A DNA stretch of 64,000 bases from Fonticula alba ATCC 38817. Its lineage: Eukaryota; Protista; Nucleariida. This document shows, piece by piece, positions 30,101 to 42,884 of the stretch. How positions within the stretch are numbered: position 1 is the stretch's first letter; each line of letters opens with the position of its first letter. Below the pieces are notes generated by a model. The model was given only the letters and a program-made list of their open reading frames with translations, searched no databases and was not told the DNA's origin. The stretch is taken from the NCBI GenBank assembly GCA_000388065.2, contig KB932206.1; one strand, 5' to 3'. Both the position numbers and the translations under genes were made by a program.

Positions 30101-32620
30101 CAATGAAATTTGGCAGATCATCATCTGCCTGACCCTGCAATGCTTTGTCATGTTCGGCCTGACGGTGTATCTGGACCGCGTCTTGCCCGATCAGCATGGC
30201 ACCCGCCGCGATCATCCGCTTTTCATTGTCGACACCCTCCTGCGGCCGTTCGGCCTCGGGCCCTACTTCTCGACTGAGGAGCCAGGTGGTGCGTATCGCA
30301 GTGCACCCTCGCTTGCTTGCCAAGTCGCGCGCGCACGCACATGCACCCTGGCCATACATGTATTGACCTGGCTCTCTCTCTCCCCCTCTCTTTCTCTCTC
30401 CCTCGCTCTCCCTCGCTCTCTTTCTCTCTCTCCCTCGCTCTCTTTCTCCCCCTCGCTCTCTCCCTCTCCCTCCCTCGCTCTCTCCCTCTCCCTCCCTCGC
30501 TCTCTTTCTCCCCCTCACTCTCTTTCTCCCCCTCACTCTCTTTCTCCCCCTCGCTCTCTCCCTCTCCCTCCCTCGCTCTCTCCCTCTCCCTCCCTCGCTC
30601 TCTTTCTCTCTCTTTCTCTCTCTCCGACTCATGCCGAATTGTTCCGCACCTTGGAAAGCCCCCACCAAGAGCTCCACTCTGGGAGCCGATGCCAGTGTCA
30701 ACTCCTCGGCCGAGGCGCTCCTTGGCGGGCAGGCGGACGAGGACAATGATGAGGAGGCCTTCGGCGGCGAGGATGCCCCTCTTCTGGCTGGGCAGCCCGG
30801 CGCCTCGCGGCAGTCAGCCAGTCTCTTTGGCATCAGCCTGCCTGGAGGGGGCGCCGGGGCCGCCGGGCGGCCGCTGACCCCGCGTGAGCTGCGCATTCTC
30901 GCCGAGGCGTCAGCCAGCCGTCCCTTCGAGGATCCGGACTGCCGGGCCGAGCGTGCCACCGCTCTGGCGGCTGCCGGGTCCCCAGCTGGCCCGGGCGAGT
31001 TCCCGATCCTGCTGGCCGGCGTGGGGAAGACCTACTACCCGACCCCGGGCCTGTCGATGGCTGGCCTGCGGGAGTGCTTCGGTCTGGCCACGTCGGGCGA
31101 TGTGCCAGCCGCCGCCGGGCCGAAGGTCGCCGTGGCTGATCTCTTCCTGGCCGTGCCAAATGGCCAGTGCTTCGGCCTGCTTGGTCCCAATGGCGCGGGC
31201 AAGACATCGCTCATCAGCGTGCTTACCGGCCTGGCTCCTGCCTCGCAGGGGGCCGGGCACTGCTTTGTCGCCGGGTTCCCGCTCACATCGATCGACGCCG
31301 TGCAGGTACCCCATTGGCCTGGCCTTGCCGCCTGTATTGCGTTTCTCTTCCACCCCCTTCCGGGGGGAGGGGCTTTCCGTGTACTAATTCGATGGTCCAA
31401 TCCGTCCTCCTCGCCTTCCCTCCCCACCCCCCCGCCCCCACCCCTGTCAGCGTCACATCGGTGTGTGCCCGCAGTTTGACATCTACTATCCGGATTTGAC
31501 GGTGGAGGACCATTTGCTGTTCTTCGCCCGGCTCAAGTGCTCGGCTTCCGACATCTCCACCGTCATGACCATGCAGGCCACACAGCAGAGCTCGCCCTTC
31601 CATGCCTTGGCCGTCAGCGCGGCCCAATCGGTGGAGCTATATCCGGAGCACTATGGCAAGCGGGCGTCCGAGTTGTCTGGCGGCATGCGCCGGCGACTGT
31701 CCCTGGCGATCGCCCTGCTCGGAGACCCGCGCGTGGTCATTCTCGACGAGCCGACCGGCGGCCTGGACCCCTCGACCCGGCGCGAAGTCTGGAAGACCAT
31801 TCGCCATATCTCACGCAACCGTGTCATCCTTCTAACCACGGTACTGTTGCGGCTTGGCTCTCTTTCTCCGGCTCTTCCGGCTCCCCCCCCCTCCTTCTTT
31901 TTTTTTTTTGTTTTTCTCGCCCAGCCCCCCACTGTTCCCTCCCTTTGCTGACGGTTGGTCCACCTGTCCCTGGCGCCCGGGGGGCTTCTTCTTCCGGGGC
32001 TTTGCCCGTTTCTTCAGCATTCCATGGAGGAGGCCGAGGCCCTGTGTGGCCGGGTGGGTGTCCTGTCCCATGGCAGCCTTCGCGCGATCGGCACGCCGGT
32101 GCACCTGAAGCGCCGCTACGCCAGCTCCTATGCGCTGACCCTCTCGCTGGTGGGCGCTGTCGACTTGGCCCGCAAGAGCCGGTCCAACATGGACCTGGAC
32201 AGTGAGGTGTCCCCGATGGCGGTTCTTTCCGATGAGGAGATCCGCGAGCGTGTGCTCCTTTGGGTGGCCGGCAATTTCCCGACGGCGGTCCCCCTGCCGG
32301 AGGAGTCCCTCAACCGGACACTCTGTTTTGAGGTTCGGGCCTGCCTGCCAGCCCCCGAGCCGGAGGGGGACGCCTCCGCGAATGGCCCGCCGGCTGCCTC
32401 GCCGACCACCGGTCCTGATGGGGAATTCGTCCTGAGCAAGGCCTTCCATTTGTTGACGCAATTGTCCTCCCTCGGGCCCGGTGGGGTGTCTGGCGACTCC
32501 CCGCGCGACACGGCCCTGGCTTCGGTCATGGGTCTGGTGCAGGACTGGAACCTCTCGCCGGCCTCACTGGAGGAGGTGTTCATGCGTATCGTCCGCCAGG
32601 AAGGCCACTTCCGGGCATAG
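27176..32620 (+). CDS. ABC transporter subfamily A, half-size (one TMD plus one NBD)
   Basis: N-terminal [15 protein letters not shown]1 ([21 protein letters not shown]), [29 protein letters not shown], Walker A GPNGAGKT (31183-31206), signature LSGGMRRRL (~31673), Walker B VILDEPT (~31736) and C-terminal SLEEVF. N-gap at 28811-28936. Confidence 0.92.
30375..30625 (+). repeat. Intronic pyrimidine-rich minisatellite (ctctccctcgctct-type units) in the ABCA gene
   Basis: Repeated ctctc/ccctcgctctc units. Confidence 0.85.
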
Positions 32621-32665
32621 TCTTCCTCCATGGGCGTGGGGGGATCTTTCGTCCGATTGGTCCGA

Positions 32666-32696
<31 letters not shown>

Positions 32697-32916
32697 TGCC
32701 TTGCACCCGGGGAACGGGAGAGGCCCACGTACATCAGGCGACCCCCCCCCCCCCTCCTTCCCCGCTCTGTGTGCCATCCAACAAAGTGTGCTGCTACTAG
32801 ACGCGCAAATGGTTCTGTGTGTATGTTCATCACATGGTTTTGGTGGGAAGAAACTCAAGGACAAGAAAGGGAGCAATGGGAGCAGGTACATGGGGGTGAA
32901 AAAAAAGGCGTGCCCA

Positions 32917-35900
32917 TTATTGGTGGTTGAGGGCATGGAAGTGATGGAGACCCGGGGAGGTGGATGAGGCATTCTGGTGGGGGAAGGCCCGGATGGAGTG
33001 GAGCTGACACTCAAACTCGAAGACGCTGGAGGGGAGAGCATGCACCGGTAGATCGCATGGGCAGGACAAAAAAAAACACACGGAGGAGGGGAGGAGAAAA
33101 TCGTCAAAGTCAGTGGACGGCCGGCCGAAAGGGAGCAGGGGGAAGGGAAGGAAGAGAGAGGGAGAAAGAGCGAGAAAGAGCATCACCCCAAAGAGCCATG
33201 GAAAGGGTAGCCACATGCTGACACATACCCGGCATGGTCATTGAAGAGGAACTTCATCATCGGCGGGCCGGGAGAAACGCCAGAGGCACCGGGGCCGGCG
33301 GACGAGTGGACGAGCGGCACCAACTGCCTGCCCCGGGGAGCAGTACCATCGCCATCATCCATGCGCTCCTCCCCGTCGGGGGTGCTGAAGAAGGCGTCAA
33401 CCGAGGGGGCATGCAAATCCCCCGCCATGAGGAGGTCCTCCGGGGTGGTCTGGGAGCCGCCAGGCGCCTGGCCCGTGCCCGATGGCTGAATCGGCACGAA
33501 GGTCAAACCGCCGGCCGGGGCCACGGCATAGATCGTGGGCCTGGCGCATGCAGGGGTGGTGGTGGTGGGCCCCTCGTTGCTGGGCATCCCGGTCGGCTGC
33601 TGGCCATTCACCAGGGAAAGAACATGCGCCGGGGGGTTGTCCGCTCCGGTGGCCGGCAGGGAAGAGGTGAAGGAAGCCCACAGACCATTGGCACCCACCT
33701 GGCCATCGGTGCCCATTTCGGCCGACATGTTCCGGCCGGCGAACCAGCCAAACAGCTCGGTCATGGAGAGGGCCGCATGCGGCCGGCCGAAGGAGGCGCC
33801 TCCGGTCGCCGGCTGGGGCGGCAGCGACCCGGTGCTGGCGGCAGCGAGCCCCGGCAGGGCGAGGGCTCGCGTGCCGGGCGGCGCTGGCAGTGCCAGGCTC
33901 CGGCCGCCGGCGACATCGCTGGCATTGCCCGGCAGCGTGGCCATCGCCGCGTCCAGGCCAGACGCCCCGAGGAAGAGGTCCGTGGCCAGTTGCTCGCCGG
34001 CGGCCGAAAGGGTGAGCCCGCCTACCAGCGAGCCGGGACCGCCCTCGGGAATCCCGAGCGCCATGGAGCCGGAAGGCCCGGGCCCGATGGACCCGAGCGG
34101 GGTCGGCAGGCCCTGCTGGATGAGCTCCACACAGGCCGCCGAGCAGACACACCCCTGGTCGCAGAGCAGAGGCTCCGACAGGTTGGCCTGGAATGCCGAC
34201 AGGTAGGACTGCATGGTGTCATAGGCGGTGATCCCGGCTCCGGGAGAGCCATACACCGAGTTGGCCAATGCAGCATCGGCATCATCCGCCGGATGCCCGG
34301 GGAGCAGCTTGGCCGAGGGCCGGTGCGGGGCATTCACCCGGGGATCCAGCGGCAGGGGGCCAGGCCGGTAGGGCATCACCGCCGACACGTCGCCCCTGCC
34401 CGGGCCGCCACTGGCCAGGGTGTTGGCCGGAAGCGAGGCCAGCATGCCGGCCGGCGCGCCCGGCACCCCCCCCGGGCCGGAGGACAAGTTCCCGGCCCAG
34501 GGAAGCAGCAGCGATGCAAAGGCGAAGAGCGACACCACATAGAAGCCCTGCTTCCAGCCGGAGAAGTAGCCATCCGACTCCGGAGACATGGAGGAGGAGG
34601 AGGAGAGTCCCGAAGCCGAGGAGGACCCATCGTCCGAGGCGGTAGAGTGCAAGTCCTCCGGGAGCGTGCCCATGCGCGGCACCGCCGAGGGGGGAGCGGC
34701 GGCCGACGGTGCGCCGGACAGGGCGGCAGCCGCCTCGGCAGCCGGTGCATACTCCGCCCGGGGAGGGGCGCCACCGCGTGCCATCGGGCCCGGCAGCGGC
34801 CCGGGAGCCGGGCCCACGGCGGCACGACACCCGGGCCCGCCGGGACAGGCGGCCGCCCGCAAGCTCGCACACTCGGCCTCCAGATCCTGGATGCGCTGTC
34901 GGGCGGCGGCCAGATCGGCCAGGAGCTCGGCAATGCGCGTGGCTCGGGCGGCACTCTCGCGGGCGGCGCGGGCCGTGGCCTCGGCCTTGCGCGCGCGTGA
35001 TGCCTCGGCCGAGGCGCGATTGCGCAGTCGCCGCAGCGTGGCCGGATCGCTGACCGCCGCCGAGGAAATCGGCGTCGGGGCCGAGCCGCTCCCCCCGCCG
35101 GTGGACAGCACACGGTCCGAAGCCTTCTTGGCCTGGAGGAGGGGAAGCGCCCCCCGGGGGCCACCGGCACCGGGGCCGCCAATGCCACCGGCACCGGACA
35201 CCACGCGGATGGCAGCCACCACGGCATCGGCCACCAGCTCGGCGGTGCTGCTGGAAATGCTGCCGGCAGCCGCCGGCGGGGAGAGGCTCGACGACCGGCC
35301 GGCCCCCTGCCCCAGCGAGGGGGTCGGTGGGCTGGAGCCACTCGGGCTGTCGGACCCGGATGGGGGGGAGCCGCTGGCGGCCGATCCGGCCGCAGGGGGG
35401 AGCGAGTGTTGCTGGCCGGCCGGGGCCGGGCCCGGGGCCACCGGGTGCCAAGCATCCGAGCTCGACGGGGCTGCGGCCGGGATGGGCTCCGCGCCCGGCA
35501 CGGTGGCGGCAGGCGCCGGCCCCTTGGGGGGGATGCTCACCCGGTGCGGACCCACCATCAGGTGCGCCGGCAGGGGGATCGGCGGGAGACTCGGCGGCAC
35601 CGATGGCAGAAGCGGGGTCAAGGCCACGCCCGTGGCCGGGGAGAAGTGCCCTGCTGGGGGGCTGTGCCCGGGCGAGGCGGACATGTGCCCGGAGCCCGGG
35701 TGCCCGGAGACATCGGACGATGATGGCGACCCGTAGGAGTGCCCTGCACTGGGCGAGCCACCGTAGTAGGCGCCCTCCGAAGGGTCGTGCATGGCATTCG
35801 GGGCCGCACTTGGCGGGAAGTACGTCTGCGTGGTGTAGCCTTGTGACGGAGCCGGGGCACTGGCCCGGGGGGATTCGTCTTTCCGGGGGGGGGGGGAAGA

Positions 35901-36775
35901 GGGAGGGCGGGTCAGTGACAAGCCACAGATGGGAGGGGAGGGGGGGGGGGGGGAAGCGGGGGAAAGAGGACTCGAGGGGGGGGATCCTGCGCACCGGAGC
36001 TGAAATAGGACCCAGGCGAAGAGCCAGCCGGCGCGAAGCTGGAATCGCTTTCATATGAAGAGGGGGTCATGAGCGCATAGTGTCCGCCTGTGCCCGCGGC
36101 CGGGGGCGGCGGGTATGAGGGCTGCGAAGGATGTGGCGGCGGTTGCTGCGGGGTCGATGACTGGTGGGAGTGCGGGTACGACTGGGAGGGGAGTGTGGCC
36201 TTGGCGTCGGCGCCCGACGACACGGGATTCTCGGGCATCGGCAGATTGAAGGGCGACGCGATGCCGGTGCCAAGCTCGGAGTAGGACGACCCCCCGGCAT
36301 ACGGGTGCTGCTGGGGATAATGCCCCGGCGCCGGGGGGGAATAGTGGCCCATCATGTGCTGGGAGTACTGCTGGCCCGGCTGATGGGGATACTGGGCAGG
36401 CGGGGCCGCTGGGTGATGGTCGGCCGCCGGGCCGGCATAATAGTTGGGATACTCGGGAGCAGGCCCGGGGGTGCCGATGGCGTAGGCACCGGCGCCGGGG
36501 ACCGGCGAGGCCGGCACCGAGGGCAGCAACTGCGGCACCGAGGGCACTGACGCCATGTCCGGCTCCGACATGGCCGGGTACTCCGGCGCATAGTGCCCAG
36601 GGTGCATGGAGGCCTGGTATGGCGGCTGCTGCGTCGGGTGAGAGTAGCTGTGGCCCGAGCGTGCCGGGGCCGATGCCTGTTGCTGGTAGTAGGAGTATTG
36701 GCTCTCATCGGCCCAGGCGCCGCCGTGAATCGGCGATGGGGGCACGACGGTGGGGAGGGCCGCACTGGTGGACAT
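32917..36775 (-). CDS. ATF6: ATF6-like ER membrane-tethered bZIP transcription factor (3 exons: 36775-35995, 35878-33229, 33025-32917)
   Basis: Contains a P/S/Y-rich N-terminus, a bZIP (RRLRNRASAEASRARK...IAELLADLAAARQRIQDLEAECASL), a hydrophobic segment FYVVSLFAFASLLLPWAG, and RSLA/RALA S1P-like sites. Lumenal blocks PTIYAVAP, PPMMKFLF and, after an in-frame splice, VFEFECQLHSIRAF resemble ATF6 DTFYVVSF, PKMSIVLP and MMQIDCQVMDTRIL. Confidence 0.65.
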
Positions 36776-38196
36776 GGTGCAATTGCGGGAGGAGGAAAGA
36801 CAGGCCAGCGCTGGCGGGCGGTCCCATCAAGGGGTGGCAAGCAGCGCGGCAGGCGAGGAGGAGGGGGAGGGAGGGGGGAGGAGGCAAGGAGCAAGGGGGG
36901 GGGGAACGGGGGGGAGAGGAGGGGAATGGTGGTGGCCACATTCGGAGGGGGCCCCCACACAGCGGGGAGCCGGAAAAAAGTCCCCCACGATGGAGGCCAG
37001 ATCGCGCGGAAAACACCCCAGGCATGATGGGCGCACTCCGCTTTCCTTGCTCCTCGAGCGCCGATTCGCCGCCAACTCCCCCCCCNNNNNNNNNNCCCCC
37101 CCCCTCCCCCCCCCGTCCAACGTGGTTGAGGGCGTCTTGCTTGCATTGTGGACATGGTCGTTGGTGTTCTCCCCCTGCCCCAAGCGAGCTGTGATGGCAC
37201 GCACGGCCGATCGTCCCACACCGATCAATGAAAATGCTAGAAGCCCGGTATTATTCGGCGGGGCACAAAAACCACGGGCGCGTCATCCGGCTGCACCGCC
37301 GGCAGGGGGTTTTCGCCGGTCCACGCTCACCCTGCTCTGGGGGGGGACCGGCCGCGGCACGCTCGGCGATCGGGCTCTATCTGCCCCCTGGACGGCGAGC
37401 AGGCGAAAACCGGGGAGATACACACGACGGGCCCGGCCGGCCCCTCGACCCGGCCCCGGAGAAGGCCCCGGGTCCCCCTCGCCCGGGGGGGGGGGGACCC
37501 GGGGCGGGGCAGCGGGCCTGGGATCCGGACGACCGCGCCACCGACGAGACGCACCGTCGCACCGGGGGGACACTCGCCACCCGCCACCGGGGCCACCGTG
37601 TGCGAGGCAGCAGGAGGCGGCCCCGTATTTAACAGAGAGGACCAATGGCCGGCGTCCAAATGTTCGAGTCACGTGTTGTCCATTACCCGCTGGGCCAATT
37701 GTTGGCCGCCACCGGCCTCCGTCCGGAGGACCGGCGGCCGTGGGGTCCCGCGCTCGTGGCGGCGAAGAAGCAGGGGTTGAGGGGAGATCTCTGGCTTTCT
37801 CCCCTCCCCCGGCCAACTGATCGAGAACCACCACTCGAACGGAGGGCAGACTCCCAGGTGGCCACCTGGGCCTCGTCCCCTCCTCCCCCTTCTCCCCGAC
37901 ACACACACACACACACACAGACACACTTGAGCACTCGCCACACCTGCCGGCATGTCGCCTGCATCCCGTCCTGTGGGCCTGTCCATAGCCGACCCTGGCC
38001 CCCCACGTATGGGCGTGCAAACACACCACACCCGAGCATGTTTGCGCAGGTGCATTGTCACTGAAATGCACACATGTGCGCGCGTCGCATGCGGGAAGAG
38101 GGACATTCCCCGGGCAATGCCACGGCCGATGGAGCTACCGTGAGACAGGCGCGGAGGAGAAAAGGGCCAGCAGGACTGGGCGCCCCGCATGGGACA

Positions 38197-40923: not shown

Positions 40924-42402
40924 ATGTCCATCCACCTCCGCGGCGACCCCCGGGTGTATACCGTCCTCTTGCGGGCCCGGTCAATGCGGGAAAGCAAGCA
41001 CCTGAAGGCCAATGAATTTGAGAACGCCGGGAAAGGTGCGCCCCCTGTCCCGGCCATGGTGACTGATTAATTGCCCGGCATGCCCCCTTACCCGACCTGC
41101 CCACTCGTCGGCGCCTCGGTCTAGTCATCCTGCCGAGCCTGGTTCTGCAAGAGCTGTCCCACCATCTGGTCACCTACCCGATGGTTTTCTCCTTCTCCTA
41201 TGGCGATCGAATCACCCATGGGGGTGTGGCCGACTTCGACCAGTGCCCAGGCAACGTGTACTTCCCCTCCTGGGTTCGTGCCGCCCAATGTCCTTCGGGC
41301 CATTGCTTGCCGAAGTCCACATCTGCGCGCCTCCTTCGTGCTGTGCCCGCCCCCTCCGCTCCTGCCGTGCTTTTGTTTGTGGCCACATGCGCGGCCACGC
41401 ATGGGCATGCAGCTGCGCATGCGCATCCCCTTGCTAACCCCTCTGGCCCCGGCCTCTCCTCCTCCCCCAACCGCCAGATGATGGACCAGCTGGGCATCAC
41501 GTCCGGTGACAATGTCGTCGTTCGCAATGTCAACCTCCCCCTGGGCAACTTTGTGCGGCTACAGCCGCTGACCGAGGACTTCCTGCAAATCCACAACCAT
41601 CGAGCCACTCTGGAGCATGGCCTCGTCCAGTATGGCGCCCTGACCAAGGGCGATGTCATCACCATCCCCTACGGCGACGATCGGGTGTACAGACTCCGGG
41701 TGCTGGACACCAAGCCGGCCCCGGCCATCGCCATCACTGAGACCGATCTCGAGGTGGACTTCGCCCCGCCGGCCGATGTGGAAGCTCGTGAGCGGGCTGA
41801 GGCCGAGCGCCGCGAAGCCGAGGCGGCCCGCCAGGAGCGCGAACGCCAGGCCCTGGAGGCCGCGCGCCTGGCCGCCGCCACGGCCGAAGCTCGCCGGGTC
41901 AACTTCGTTCCCTTCTCCGGGTCCGGGACGCGCGTGCGCTCCGGCACGGCCGGGCCTTCGGGCTCTCGATCGGGCCATGACCCGGCCCTTGAGGCGGTGC
42001 GCATCGCCCACTGGCGCCCGCTGTCCTCCTCTTCGCGCGCTTTCCCCCCCCCCCCCCACACACACACACCACGCCTTGCCCAATGTCTGACCCCCTTCAT
42101 CGCAGATCCTTGCCGAGGCTGCTGCCCAGAAGCCCGTCGTCCGGCCCTTCCTCCATGGCGTCAACCCGGCCGCCGTGGTCCCGCTGGACCTGGGCCCGGT
42201 CGGTGCCATTGTCATCGGGTCACCGCAGCGGCTGGCCGACCCCGAGCAGCTGAAGGCCGCCAGCCAGGGGCTCCTTTCCTCCGGGGCTTCCTCTTCGGAC
42301 ACAGCCCTGCCCGGCGGGGCGCCAATCTTCTCCGGGACCAGTGCCACACTCAAGAAGAAGAAGCGCTCGAAAAAGGCCAAGTCCAGTGTCGACGCGCCAT
42401 AG
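40924..42402 (+). CDS. UFD1: Ubiquitin fusion degradation protein 1 (Cdc48/p97 adaptor)
   Basis: Spliced GK|VILPS..TYPMVF..THGGVADF..VYFPSW|MM, then LQPLTEDFLQIHNHRATLE..LTKGDVITI..VLDTKP..IAITETDLEVDFAPP, and a SHP box FVPFSGSGTRV. Confidence 0.9.
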
Positions 42403-42884
42403 ATCGAGCGCGTCGCCGGCCTAGCCCGGCCCTGCCTCTTCCCGGGAGCTCCCCCCCCCTCGCTTCTGCCCCCCTTCCCCCCCCCCTCTCCCTGTCCCTC
42501 TGTCCCAAGCTTTTGGGTGCGATCCTGGTTGTCGATTTGCGAATTTGAAAACCTGCACTCTTTCCTTACGTGTCCCTGCTTCTGTGCCTTTGTGTGCAGG
42601 TGAGTCTATTCCTGCGAAGTCGGCCCCAAAGGGAGGTGATGGGGAGGGGAGGAGGGAGGGGAGGGAGCGGGCGAACAGGGGGCAGGACAATGCGAGGCCG
42701 GGGGAGGAATGCGCCCACCGGAGGGCGGGGCGCAAGTAGCCCGACACTTGCCGCCTGTGCGTGCGCGCGTGGGCACACGAAAGACACACAGACACACACA
42801 CACATCCATGTATGAATATATAAATATATATCTGTGTGCACATGTGTGATAGGGCGGCACGCGTGGATGTGCATGGGCCCATAA

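What the first reader, a model, noticed from the sequence alone, without database searches (positions are those of the whole stretch)
32917..36775. ATF6-type membrane-tethered bZIP with a conserved lumenal domain, hidden by a terminal intron
Seen: bZIP (~35050-34850), then a TM-like segment (~34548-34495), RSLA/RALA motifs (~33900-33855), PTIYAVAP and PPMMKFLF. A GTATGT..CCAG intron (33228-33026) joins in frame to VFEFECQLHSIRAF. Known: ATF6 is cleaved by S1P (RxxL/RxLx) and S2P, its lumenal domain has DTFYVVSF..PKMSIVLP..MMQIDCQVMDTRIL, and yeasts use only Ire1/Hac1. Inference: an ATF6 arm of the UPR outside animals, implying an older origin than usually assumed.
Basis: partly seen in the sequence, partly recalled or inferred. 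Interest (0 to 1): 0.75.

Follow-up and report, generated by a model that had tools for sequence, protein, structure and literature searches.

The report
Membrane-tethered bZIP candidate in Fonticula
An expressed gene of the slime-mould-like protist Fonticula alba encodes a bZIP DNA-binding protein with one probable membrane anchor, so it may work like the ER-stress sensor ATF6; its supposed ATF6-like lumenal domain could not be confirmed, and the gene model is already public.

Summary
The three-exon gene on the minus strand (32917-36775) is real. RNA-derived contigs from two samples carry both splice joints exactly, including the terminal intron 33228-33026. The product is the public Fonticula alba protein XP_009495912.1 (1179 aa, "BZIP domain-containing protein"), so the terminal intron is not hidden.

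It has a divergent but in-register bZIP (aa 543-600). It has one hydrophobic, uncharged segment (aa 705-725) that is the only membrane-span candidate. A 454-aa C-terminal part follows.

The "conserved ATF6 lumenal domain" is not supported. An exhaustive HMMER search, word searches, Pfam, PDB, Atlas and metagenome scans find no relative. Two of the three quoted motif matches are at chance level. The basic region lacks the ATF6/OASIS KKKEY signature, and no S1P site lies near the membrane. I could not obtain an ATF6 lumenal sequence by reference, so the direct profile comparison remains undone.

Best reading: a type II membrane-tethered bZIP factor that works like ATF6, CREB3 or bZIP28, with unresolved ancestry (about 0.5). 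ATF6-like factors outside animals are already reported. Interest is modest.

The parts
35995..36775 (-). Exon 1: ATG at 36775-36773, codes aa 1-260 plus the first base of codon 261. Pro/Gln/Tyr/Ser-rich low-complexity N-terminus.
   Evidence: ORF and sequence. RNA-derived contigs cover 36025-36529 and 36648-36861. Identical to the public protein P0001.
35879..35994 (-). Intron 1, 116 nt: donor GTGCGC, CTGAC branch-like site, poly-C tract, AG acceptor. Joins the 287-aa and 912-aa ORFs in frame.
   Evidence: Read. The joint 35878|35995 (CT..AC on the + strand) is present in contigs of X1 and X3.
33229..35878 (-). Exon 2: aa 261-1144 (part). Holds the bZIP, the linker, the membrane-span candidate and most of the C-terminal part.
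   Evidence: GC3 of 0.72-0.90 in this frame along the whole length. Contigs with 0 differences.
34986..35033 (-). bZIP basic region, aa 543-558 (RRLRNRASAEASRARK). Carries the N-x2-SA-x2-SR invariants.
   Evidence: for coordinates. Pfam bZIP_2, bZIP_Maf and bZIP_1 at E 0.024-0.037 on the isolated piece. Aligns to the GCN4 basic region.
34860..34985 (-). Leucine zipper, aa 559-600, in canonical register with the basic region. The first two heptads are Ala/Arg-rich. Then a = I, L, I, C and d = L, A, L, L.
   Evidence: Heptad count by eye on the sequence. Pfam alignments span this stretch.
34485..34547 (-). Hydrophobic uncharged segment, aa 705-725 (GFYVVSLFAFASLLLPWAGNL). The only membrane-span candidate. 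Trp/Tyr at both ends; Pro719 and Asn724 at the C-terminal end.
   Evidence: Kyte-Doolittle 1.64 over 19 residues. Lowest summed insertion cost in the protein, 1.44 against 5.12 for the next best. Lies in a 51-residue stretch with no D, E, K, R or H. Shuffle fraction 0.04-0.08.
33231..34484 (-). C-terminal (putative lumenal) part coded by exon 2, aa 726-1143. Gly/Pro/Ala-rich stretches, 5 of its 6 Cys, sequons at 826, 912 and 977, RSLA/RALA at 920/931.
   Evidence: No relative found in any search.
33026..33228 (-). Intron 2 (terminal), 203 nt, GTATGT...CCAG, 56% GC.
   Evidence: The joint 33025|33229 is present in contigs of X1 (222 nt on the short side) and X3 (128 nt). GC content.
32917..33025 (-). 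Exon 3: last 35 aa (VFEFECQLHSIRAF..., with Cys1150 and sequon N1162) and the TAA stop at 32919-32917.
   Evidence: The 14-residue match to the ATF6 string quoted in the finding scores 21, reached by 0.6% of shuffles.
32804..32916 (-). 3' untranslated region, at least this far.
   Evidence: X1 contig record 1 runs from 34412 across the joint to 32804.

Best explanation
The gene encodes a 1179-residue transcription factor of Fonticula alba that is probably made as a type II membrane protein. Residues 1-704 would face the cytosol: a low-complexity activation-type region followed by a divergent bZIP at 543-600. Residues 705-725 would span the ER membrane, and residues 726-1179 would lie in the lumen. 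By analogy with ATF6, CREB3/OASIS and plant bZIP17/28, the DNA-binding half would be held out of the nucleus until a cut in or near the membrane span releases it. Pro719 and Asn724 at the lumenal end of the span are the kind of helix-breaking residues that site-2-type intramembrane proteases need.

What is shown: the gene model, its expression and splicing, the bZIP signature, and the single hydrophobic segment.

What is inferred: membrane insertion, topology, proteolytic release, and any link to ER stress.

The C-terminal part is an orphan sequence. Whether it descends from the ATF6 lumenal domain is unresolved and, on present tests, unsupported.
For: - Both introns and 0 differences in RNA-derived contigs from two samples.
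- The product is identical to public XP_009495912.1 / A0A058Z743.
- The coding frame is upheld by GC3 of 0.72-0.90 through the C-terminal part.
- bZIP: three Pfam bZIP models at E 0.02-0.04; the GCN4 basic region aligns as SDPAxLxRxRNxxxAxxSRARK; the heptads are in canonical register.
- Membrane span: the unique minimum of summed insertion cost, inside a 51-residue stretch with no D, E, K, R or H, with aromatic residues at both ends.
- A 700-residue N-terminus with no signal-like segment can only stay cytosolic (inference).
- All five N-x-S/T sequons and 6 of the 9 Cys lie at or after the span.
- 16% of vertebrate bZIP-domain proteins pair with a membrane span, and ATF6's own span is weakly predicted: 2 of 4 programs in an early screen (PMC13294678).
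Against: - The hydrophobic segment is marginal.
- No dedicated membrane-span predictor was available.
- The excess of sequons and Cys is not statistically significant.
- There is no canonical S1P site within about 30 residues of the span.
- No orthologue was found anywhere, so conservation of the layout cannot be checked.
- AlphaFold2 on the single sequence gave pLDDT 35-38, which is unusable.
- The bZIP is below Pfam's gathering scores.
Confidence: 0.5

Rival explanations
1. A soluble nuclear bZIP factor. The hydrophobic stretch at 705-725 is not a membrane span but part of a folded or aggregation-prone C-terminal region. The resemblance to ATF6's layout is coincidental.
For: - The hydrophobic segment is only marginal, and 4-8% of shuffles reach it.
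- Kyte-Doolittle ranks a clearly non-membrane segment (475-493, which holds D and R) even higher.
- The C-terminal part has the same Gly/Pro/Ala/Ser low complexity as the N-terminal part.
- There is no relative and no lumenal-domain family match.
- The basic region looks GCN4-like rather than ATF6-like.
Against: - On an insertion-cost scale the segment is by far the best in the protein (1.44 against 5.12). It sits in a 51-residue stretch without D, E, K, R or H, with Trp/Tyr belts about 18 residues apart.
- All the sequons and most of the Cys lie after it.
Confidence: 0.3
2. One reading: a true ATF6 orthologue whose lumenal domain descends from that of animal ATF6. It would be cleaved by S1P at RSLA/RALA and then by S2P, implying an ATF6 arm of the UPR in the opisthokont ancestor.
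For: - The layout is the same.
- The C-terminal 14-residue match (xFEFECQLxxIRAF against the MMQIDCQVMDTRIL quoted in the finding) scores 21, reached by 0.6% of shuffles. It sits near the C-terminus and holds a Cys, as one of ATF6's two conserved lumenal Cys is said to.
- Strands are predicted over TIYAV, MMKFLFND and VFEFECQL, though at very low confidence.
- Pro and Asn lie in the span.
Against: - An exhaustive phmmer search of aa 701-1143 against 1.84 billion representatives finds only the protein itself and a spurious bacterial repeat protein.
- There is nothing at E<=10 for aa 1030-1179.
- Pfam, PDB, Atlas and metagenome scans are blank.
- The other two motif matches are at chance level, and one ATF6 string fits the membrane span better.
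- With about 250 possible 14-mers in an ATF6 lumenal domain, one match at 0.6% is expected by chance.
- The basic region lacks the ATF6/OASIS KKKEY and Tyr27.
- RSLA and RALA lie about 200 residues from the span, whereas S2P cutting of ATF6 depends on S1P first shortening the lumenal part (Shen & Prywes 2004, as cited). RxLx motifs are at chance frequency.
Confidence: 0.12
3. An Ire1-dependent factor of the bZIP60/XBP1u kind. The unspliced mRNA encodes a bZIP with a hydrophobic anchor, and Ire1 removes a short unconventional intron, shifting the frame and dropping the anchor.
For: Only the layout (bZIP followed by a hydrophobic segment), together with the fact that Ire1/Hac1 is the UPR arm known on the fungal side (general knowledge; PMC4736632 groups ATF6 with HAC1).
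Against: - Exon 2 holds one CNGNNGN hairpin loop with a stem of 4 or more pairs, against 3.3 expected. There is no pair of them 15-400 nt apart that would shift the frame.
- No small deletion is seen in the RNA contigs (tables 4 and 5), though those samples were not known to be stressed.
Confidence: 0.03

Closest known systems
ATF6 alpha/beta (animals; orthologues reported in unicellular holozoans)
   Same: The same order of parts: activation region, bZIP, one weakly hydrophobic type II span with Pro/Asn, and a long C-terminal part with Cys and N-glycosylation sequons. There is one 14-residue C-terminal resemblance around a Cys.
   Different: - No detectable sequence relation of the C-terminal part.
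- The basic region lacks the KKKEY/Tyr27 signature.
- The span lies about 105 residues after the zipper rather than about 10 (the ATF6 figure is from memory).
- No RxxL site next to the membrane.
- The C-terminal part is about 455 aa and largely low complexity.
- The lineage is Holomycota.
Plant bZIP17/bZIP28
   Same: A type II membrane-tethered bZIP whose lumenal tail holds intrinsically disordered stretches; BiP binds those stretches in bZIP28 (PMC3935173). A helix-breaking residue lies in the span.
   Different: bZIP28 has a canonical RRIL S1P site in its lumenal domain. No sequence match was found here, and a direct comparison was not possible.
CREB3/OASIS family
   Same: Membrane-tethered bZIPs released by regulated intramembrane proteolysis. 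They are present in Capsaspora.
   Different: OASIS basic regions read NKxSAxxSRxKKKEY with Tyr27. This protein does not.
GCN4/Jun-type soluble bZIPs
   Same: They are the best, though non-significant, solved-structure matches to the basic region: SDPAxLxRxRNxxxAxxSRARK, E 0.4.
   Different: Those proteins have no hydrophobic segment and no long C-terminal extension. The match covers 27 residues only.

Membership tests
bZIP superfamily | Basic region with N-x7-R/K (NxxSAxxSR) followed in register by heptad Leu/hydrophobic repeats | tested here: met
   NRASAEASR is present. The d and a positions from +18 to +42 are I/L/I/C and L/A/L/L. Three Pfam bZIP models match at E 0.02-0.04, below their gathering scores. 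The GCN4 basic region aligns.
ATF6 | ATF6/OASIS-type basic region (…KNRESAxxSRKKKKEY, Tyr at position 27) | tested here: not met
   ATF6 rows of PMC4736632 Table S1 were compared with RNRASAEASRARKAEA. The generic invariants are kept, but KKKEY and the Tyr are absent.
ATF6 | Single type II membrane span after the bZIP | tested here: inconclusive
   There is a unique hydrophobic uncharged segment at 705-725. It is marginal, reached by 4-8% of shuffles. No dedicated predictor was available.
ATF6 | Lumenal domain homologous to that of ATF6 | tested here: inconclusive
   Every sequence search was blank. The motif test shows 2 of 3 matches at chance level and 1 at 0.6% uncorrected. A direct profile-profile comparison could not be run because no ATF6 lumenal sequence could be obtained by reference (one search failed). 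The models were too poor for fold comparison.
ATF6 | S1P site (RxxL/RxLx) a short distance into the lumen from the span | tested here: not met
   The nearest candidate is RGDV at 755, which has Asp at P2. RSLA and RALA lie at 920 and 931, about 195-206 residues out. The frequency of such motifs is at chance.
ATF6 | Helix-destabilising Asn/Pro in the span, needed for S2P | tested here: met
   Pro719 and Asn724 are present. The requirement itself is recalled from the ATF6/SREBP literature and was not checked here.
ATF6 | S1P and S2P present in the genome; cleavage and nuclear entry on ER stress | not testable with these tools
   Only this 64-kb window is readable. The scan's notes on this genome name no S1P, S2P or Ire1. 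No stress RNA or protein data are available.
HAC1/XBP1/bZIP60 (Ire1-spliced bZIPs) | Twin hairpins with CNGNNGN loops flanking a short frame-shifting intron | tested here: not met
   One such loop against 3.3 expected by chance, and no pair.

The most novel reading that the evidence does not exclude
Fonticula, on the fungal side of the opisthokonts, keeps a genuine ATF6-type sensor whose lumenal domain has diverged almost beyond recognition; only the C-terminal Cys-containing strand is still visible. The membrane-tethered bZIP arm of the UPR would then predate the animal-fungal split and have been lost in true Fungi, which kept only Ire1/Hac1.
Probability: 0.12. Interest if true: 0.6.

Novelty: new member of a known kind. 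Interest (0 to 1): 0.3.

Why it matters
If the anchor is real, this would be the first membrane-tethered bZIP noted on the fungal side of the opisthokonts. It would give a handle on when the proteolytic (ATF6-like) way of signalling from the ER arose and when fungi lost it.

The gain is limited. ATF6-like factors are already reported in unicellular relatives of animals. Plants have working equivalents. A common ATF6/OASIS-HAC1-plant bZIP ancestor has already been proposed (PMC4736632). The protein is a public, if uncharacterised, record.

As it stands, the finding is a candidate with an untested membrane span and an orphan C-terminal part.

Tried and rejected
1. Pfam on the whole ORFs gave no bZIP and no lumenal family. 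Only the isolated bZIP piece gave weak hits.
2. Exhaustive phmmer of aa 701-1143 found only the protein itself and P0002. P0002 is a bacterial repeat protein that matches the FFSTPDGEE stretch, which I judged spurious.
3. Word-index searches of aa 1030-1179 and aa 525-730 found only the protein itself.
4. I tried to fish real ATF6 proteins out of the database with an alignment of the C-terminal part plus the 14-residue ATF6 string quoted in the finding. Nothing came back at E<=10.
5. ESM Atlas by features gave no usable hit.
6. The PDB by sequence gave nothing for the C-terminal part.
7. The metagenome scan found no relative.
8. AlphaFold2 on single sequences (aa 780-1179 and aa 1030-1179) gave pLDDT 35 and 38. 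The Atlas fold search on the second model gave TM <= 0.36 to unrelated bacterial clusters, which is meaningless.
9. Raw RNA runs X12 and X13, filed under 'organism B', gave 3-4 partial reads at low-complexity places only. They are not this organism's transcripts.
10. The Ire1-type twin hairpin scan was negative.
11. The joint 33169|35941 and the 24 foreign letters between 35181 and 36094 are probably contigs of other loci that share low-complexity words. The 24-mer is absent from the window.
Full report
**What is in the sequence.** The window is GC-rich eukaryotic DNA, 57-74% GC in most 2-kb windows. On the minus strand, a 287-aa ORF (36775-35912) and a 912-aa ORF (35921-33183) lie in different frames. 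Reading the junction shows a 116-nt intron, 35994-35879. It has the donor GTGCGC, which fits the GTNCGY donor habit another reader noted for this genome. It also has a CTGAC branch-like site, a poly-C tract and an AG, and it joins the two ORFs in frame. The three exons add up to 3540 nt, or 1179 codons with the stop codon excluded.

**Is the model real?** Yes. Logan contigs of two small 2012 runs (X1 and X3; two samples, one study) match the window with no differences. They carry both joints exactly: 33025|33229 skipping 203 nt, and 35878|35995 skipping 116 nt, both CT..AC on the plus strand. Contigs that lack introns must come from RNA, so the gene is expressed and spliced as modelled, and the 3' UTR reaches at least 32804. 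GC at third codon positions is 0.72-0.90 in this frame along the whole length, including the C-terminal part. That matters in a genome where long chance ORFs abound on both strands. For one search I joined the exons inside a script, only to count GC by codon position. Nothing joined by me was sent to a search tool. I searched exon by exon by reference until the database returned its own full-length record.

**Identity.** The exhaustive HMMER search returned a 1179-aa protein identical to the model (P0001). It is KCV69347.1 / XP_009495912.1, H696_03779, 'hypothetical protein' of Fonticula alba. UniProt A0A058Z743 calls it 'BZIP domain-containing protein'. Fonticula alba is an opisthokont of the order Rotosphaerida, so it is not an animal. 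The terminal intron and last exon are therefore already in the public annotation, and nothing is hidden.

**The bZIP.** Pfam does not report a bZIP on the whole ORF. On the isolated piece, bZIP_2, bZIP_Maf and bZIP_1 match at E 0.024-0.037, below their gathering scores. Against solved structures, the best basic-region matches are GCN4 chains, sharing SDPAxLxRxRNxxxAxxSRARK at E about 0.4. The invariant NxxSAxxSR is intact as NRASAEASR. Counting from the basic region, the heptads are in canonical register. The first two are Ala/Arg-rich, and then a = I, L, I, C and d = L, A, L, L. I accept it as a genuine but divergent bZIP.

It is not ATF6-like in its diagnostic residues. ATF6 rows in the data table of Jindrich & Degnan read KRQQRMIKNRESACLSRKKKKEY. 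OASIS rows read ...RNKISAxESRKRKKEY, with a family-specific Tyr at position 27. This protein reads ...LRNRASAEASRARKAEAT.

**The membrane-span candidate.** Residues 705-725 (GFYVVSLFAFASLLLPWAGNL, 34547-34485) score 1.64 on Kyte-Doolittle over 19 residues. The segment sits in a 51-residue stretch with no D, E, K, R or H, with Trp/Tyr at both ends and Pro719/Asn724 at the far end. The value is marginal, though, and 4-8% of shuffles of this Ala/Leu-rich protein reach it. All five N-x-S/T sequons (724, 826, 912, 977, 1162) and six of the nine Cys lie at or after the segment. Expected counts show this is not significant. A 700-residue N-terminus holding a DNA-binding domain can only be cytosolic, so if the segment spans the membrane the topology is type II (inference).

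**The 'conserved lumenal domain'.** This is the weak point of the finding.
- Pfam finds nothing on aa 701-1143 or aa 1000-1179, even at E 10.
- phmmer of aa 701-1143 against 1.84 billion representative proteins finds only the protein itself and a bacterial repeat protein that matches one short acidic stretch.
- The word-index searches of aa 1030-1179 and of aa 525-730 find only the protein itself at E<=10.
- Atlas features, PDB sequences and a metagenome scan are blank.

The protein is an orphan by every sequence test available here.

I then scored the three ATF6 strings quoted in the finding against the C-terminal part, with 20,000 shuffles.
- DTFYVVSF against PTIYAVAP scores 12, which 30% of shuffles reach. 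The best match to that string in the whole protein is the membrane segment QGFYVVSL (score 23), which is also where MAFFT placed it.
- PKMSIVLP against PPMMKFLF scores 6, which every shuffle reaches.
- MMQIDCQVMDTRIL against VFEFECQLHSIRAF scores 21, which 0.6% of shuffles reach.

All three in order occur in 0.05% of shuffles, but that figure is driven by the 14-mer alone. The strings were also chosen after the fact from a domain with about 250 possible 14-mers, so one such match is roughly what chance gives. The position of the 14-mer near the C-terminus and its Cys keep homology possible. ATF6's lumenal domain is said to have two conserved Cys. This does not make homology shown.

AlphaFold2 without an alignment gave pLDDT 35 and 38. 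Strands were predicted over TIYAV, TFVPI, RQLVPLV, MMKFLFND and VFEFECQL. The Atlas fold search on the second model returned only TM <= 0.36 matches to unrelated bacterial clusters.

The decisive comparison is a profile of ATF6 lumenal domains against this part. I could not run it because no ATF6 lumenal sequence could be obtained by reference. My one attempt to retrieve one failed, and I did not type one in.

**Protease sites.** RSLA (920) and RALA (931) fit R-x-L-x, but such motifs occur 4 times against 2.4 expected. They lie about 195-206 residues from the span. The nearest R-x-x-hydrophobic site, RGDV at 755, has Asp at P2. In ATF6, S2P cutting depends on S1P first shortening the lumenal part (Shen & Prywes 2004, as listed). 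Plant bZIP28 carries a canonical RRIL. So the S1P step is not supported here. The Pro and Asn in the span are compatible with an S2P-type or another intramembrane protease. Whether Fonticula has S1P or S2P cannot be tested from one window, and the scan's notes on this genome mention neither.

**Alternatives.**
- The hydrophobic segment may not be a span, in which case this is a soluble bZIP factor with long disordered flanks. I give that 0.3.
- An Ire1-spliced factor of the bZIP60/XBP1u kind would also have a bZIP followed by an anchor. Exon 2 holds only one CNGNNGN hairpin loop against 3.3 expected, and no frame-shifting pair. I give that 0.03.

**What is known.** No paper in the library pairs ATF6 with Fonticula, and the single paper that pairs Fonticula with the unfolded protein response is on an unrelated subject. 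Jindrich & Degnan (PMC4736632) report ATF6 with an ATF6-specific domain in unicellular holozoans. They found none of those domains in fungal orthologues. They recover a cluster of animal OASIS-ATF6, fungal HAC1, plant proto-B and heterokont bZIPs, which they take as ancestral. Their support values for ATF6 in Monosiga and Capsaspora are low. Plant bZIP28 is an established type II, BiP-retained, S1P/S2P-processed equivalent. One paper states that amoebae have no ATF6, S1P or S2P (PMC8507491). So 'ATF6 outside animals' and 'an older origin' are not new ideas. A membrane-tethered bZIP in Holomycota would be a new instance.

**Verdict.** The ATF6 interpretation holds only for the layout. I file the protein as a probable membrane-tethered bZIP factor that would work like ATF6, CREB3 or bZIP28 (0.5). 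It is not filed as a member of the ATF6 family, because two defining features tested here were not met (the basic-region signature and a juxtamembrane S1P site) and the key one, lumenal homology, is unproven. Interest is 0.3.

**Operating notes.** No step touching harmful sequence arose.

Noticed in passing
window 41181-42548 (+): An ORF with a strong UFD1 N-terminal subdomain match (Pfam UFD1_N2, E 1.7e-26). UFD1 is the Cdc48 cofactor used in ER-associated degradation. It lies about 4.4 kb upstream of the bZIP gene, which is probably coincidence.
   Followed up: no
window 30631-32620 (+): A convergent neighbour: an ABC transporter (Pfam ABC_tran, E 2e-7) whose last ORF ends at 32620. Its 3' end lies about 180-300 nt from the bZIP gene's 3' UTR, with a (GA)n microsatellite at about 32664-32692 between them.
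   Followed up: partly
window about 37086-37095: An assembly gap of ten N between poly-G runs, just upstream of the gene's 5' UTR. The promoter region is therefore incomplete.
   Followed up: no
window 35181 and 36094: Contigs in both RNA-derived runs touch these two places with 24 foreign letters between them. The 24-mer is absent from the window. They are most likely contigs of another locus that shares GC-rich low-complexity words. The removed-minus-inserted length (888 nt) would be in frame, so an isoform or allele is not strictly excluded.
   Followed up: partly
window 35879-35994 (-): Intron 1 uses the donor GTGCGC, which fits the GTNCGY donor habit another reader noted for this genome. 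The terminal intron uses the more usual GTATGT.
   Followed up: partly
runs X5-X24 ('organism B'): Raw RNA runs offered as 'same species label' do not contain this organism's transcripts. Two of them gave only 3-4 partial reads at low-complexity places. The label link looks unreliable for this genome.
   Followed up: partly
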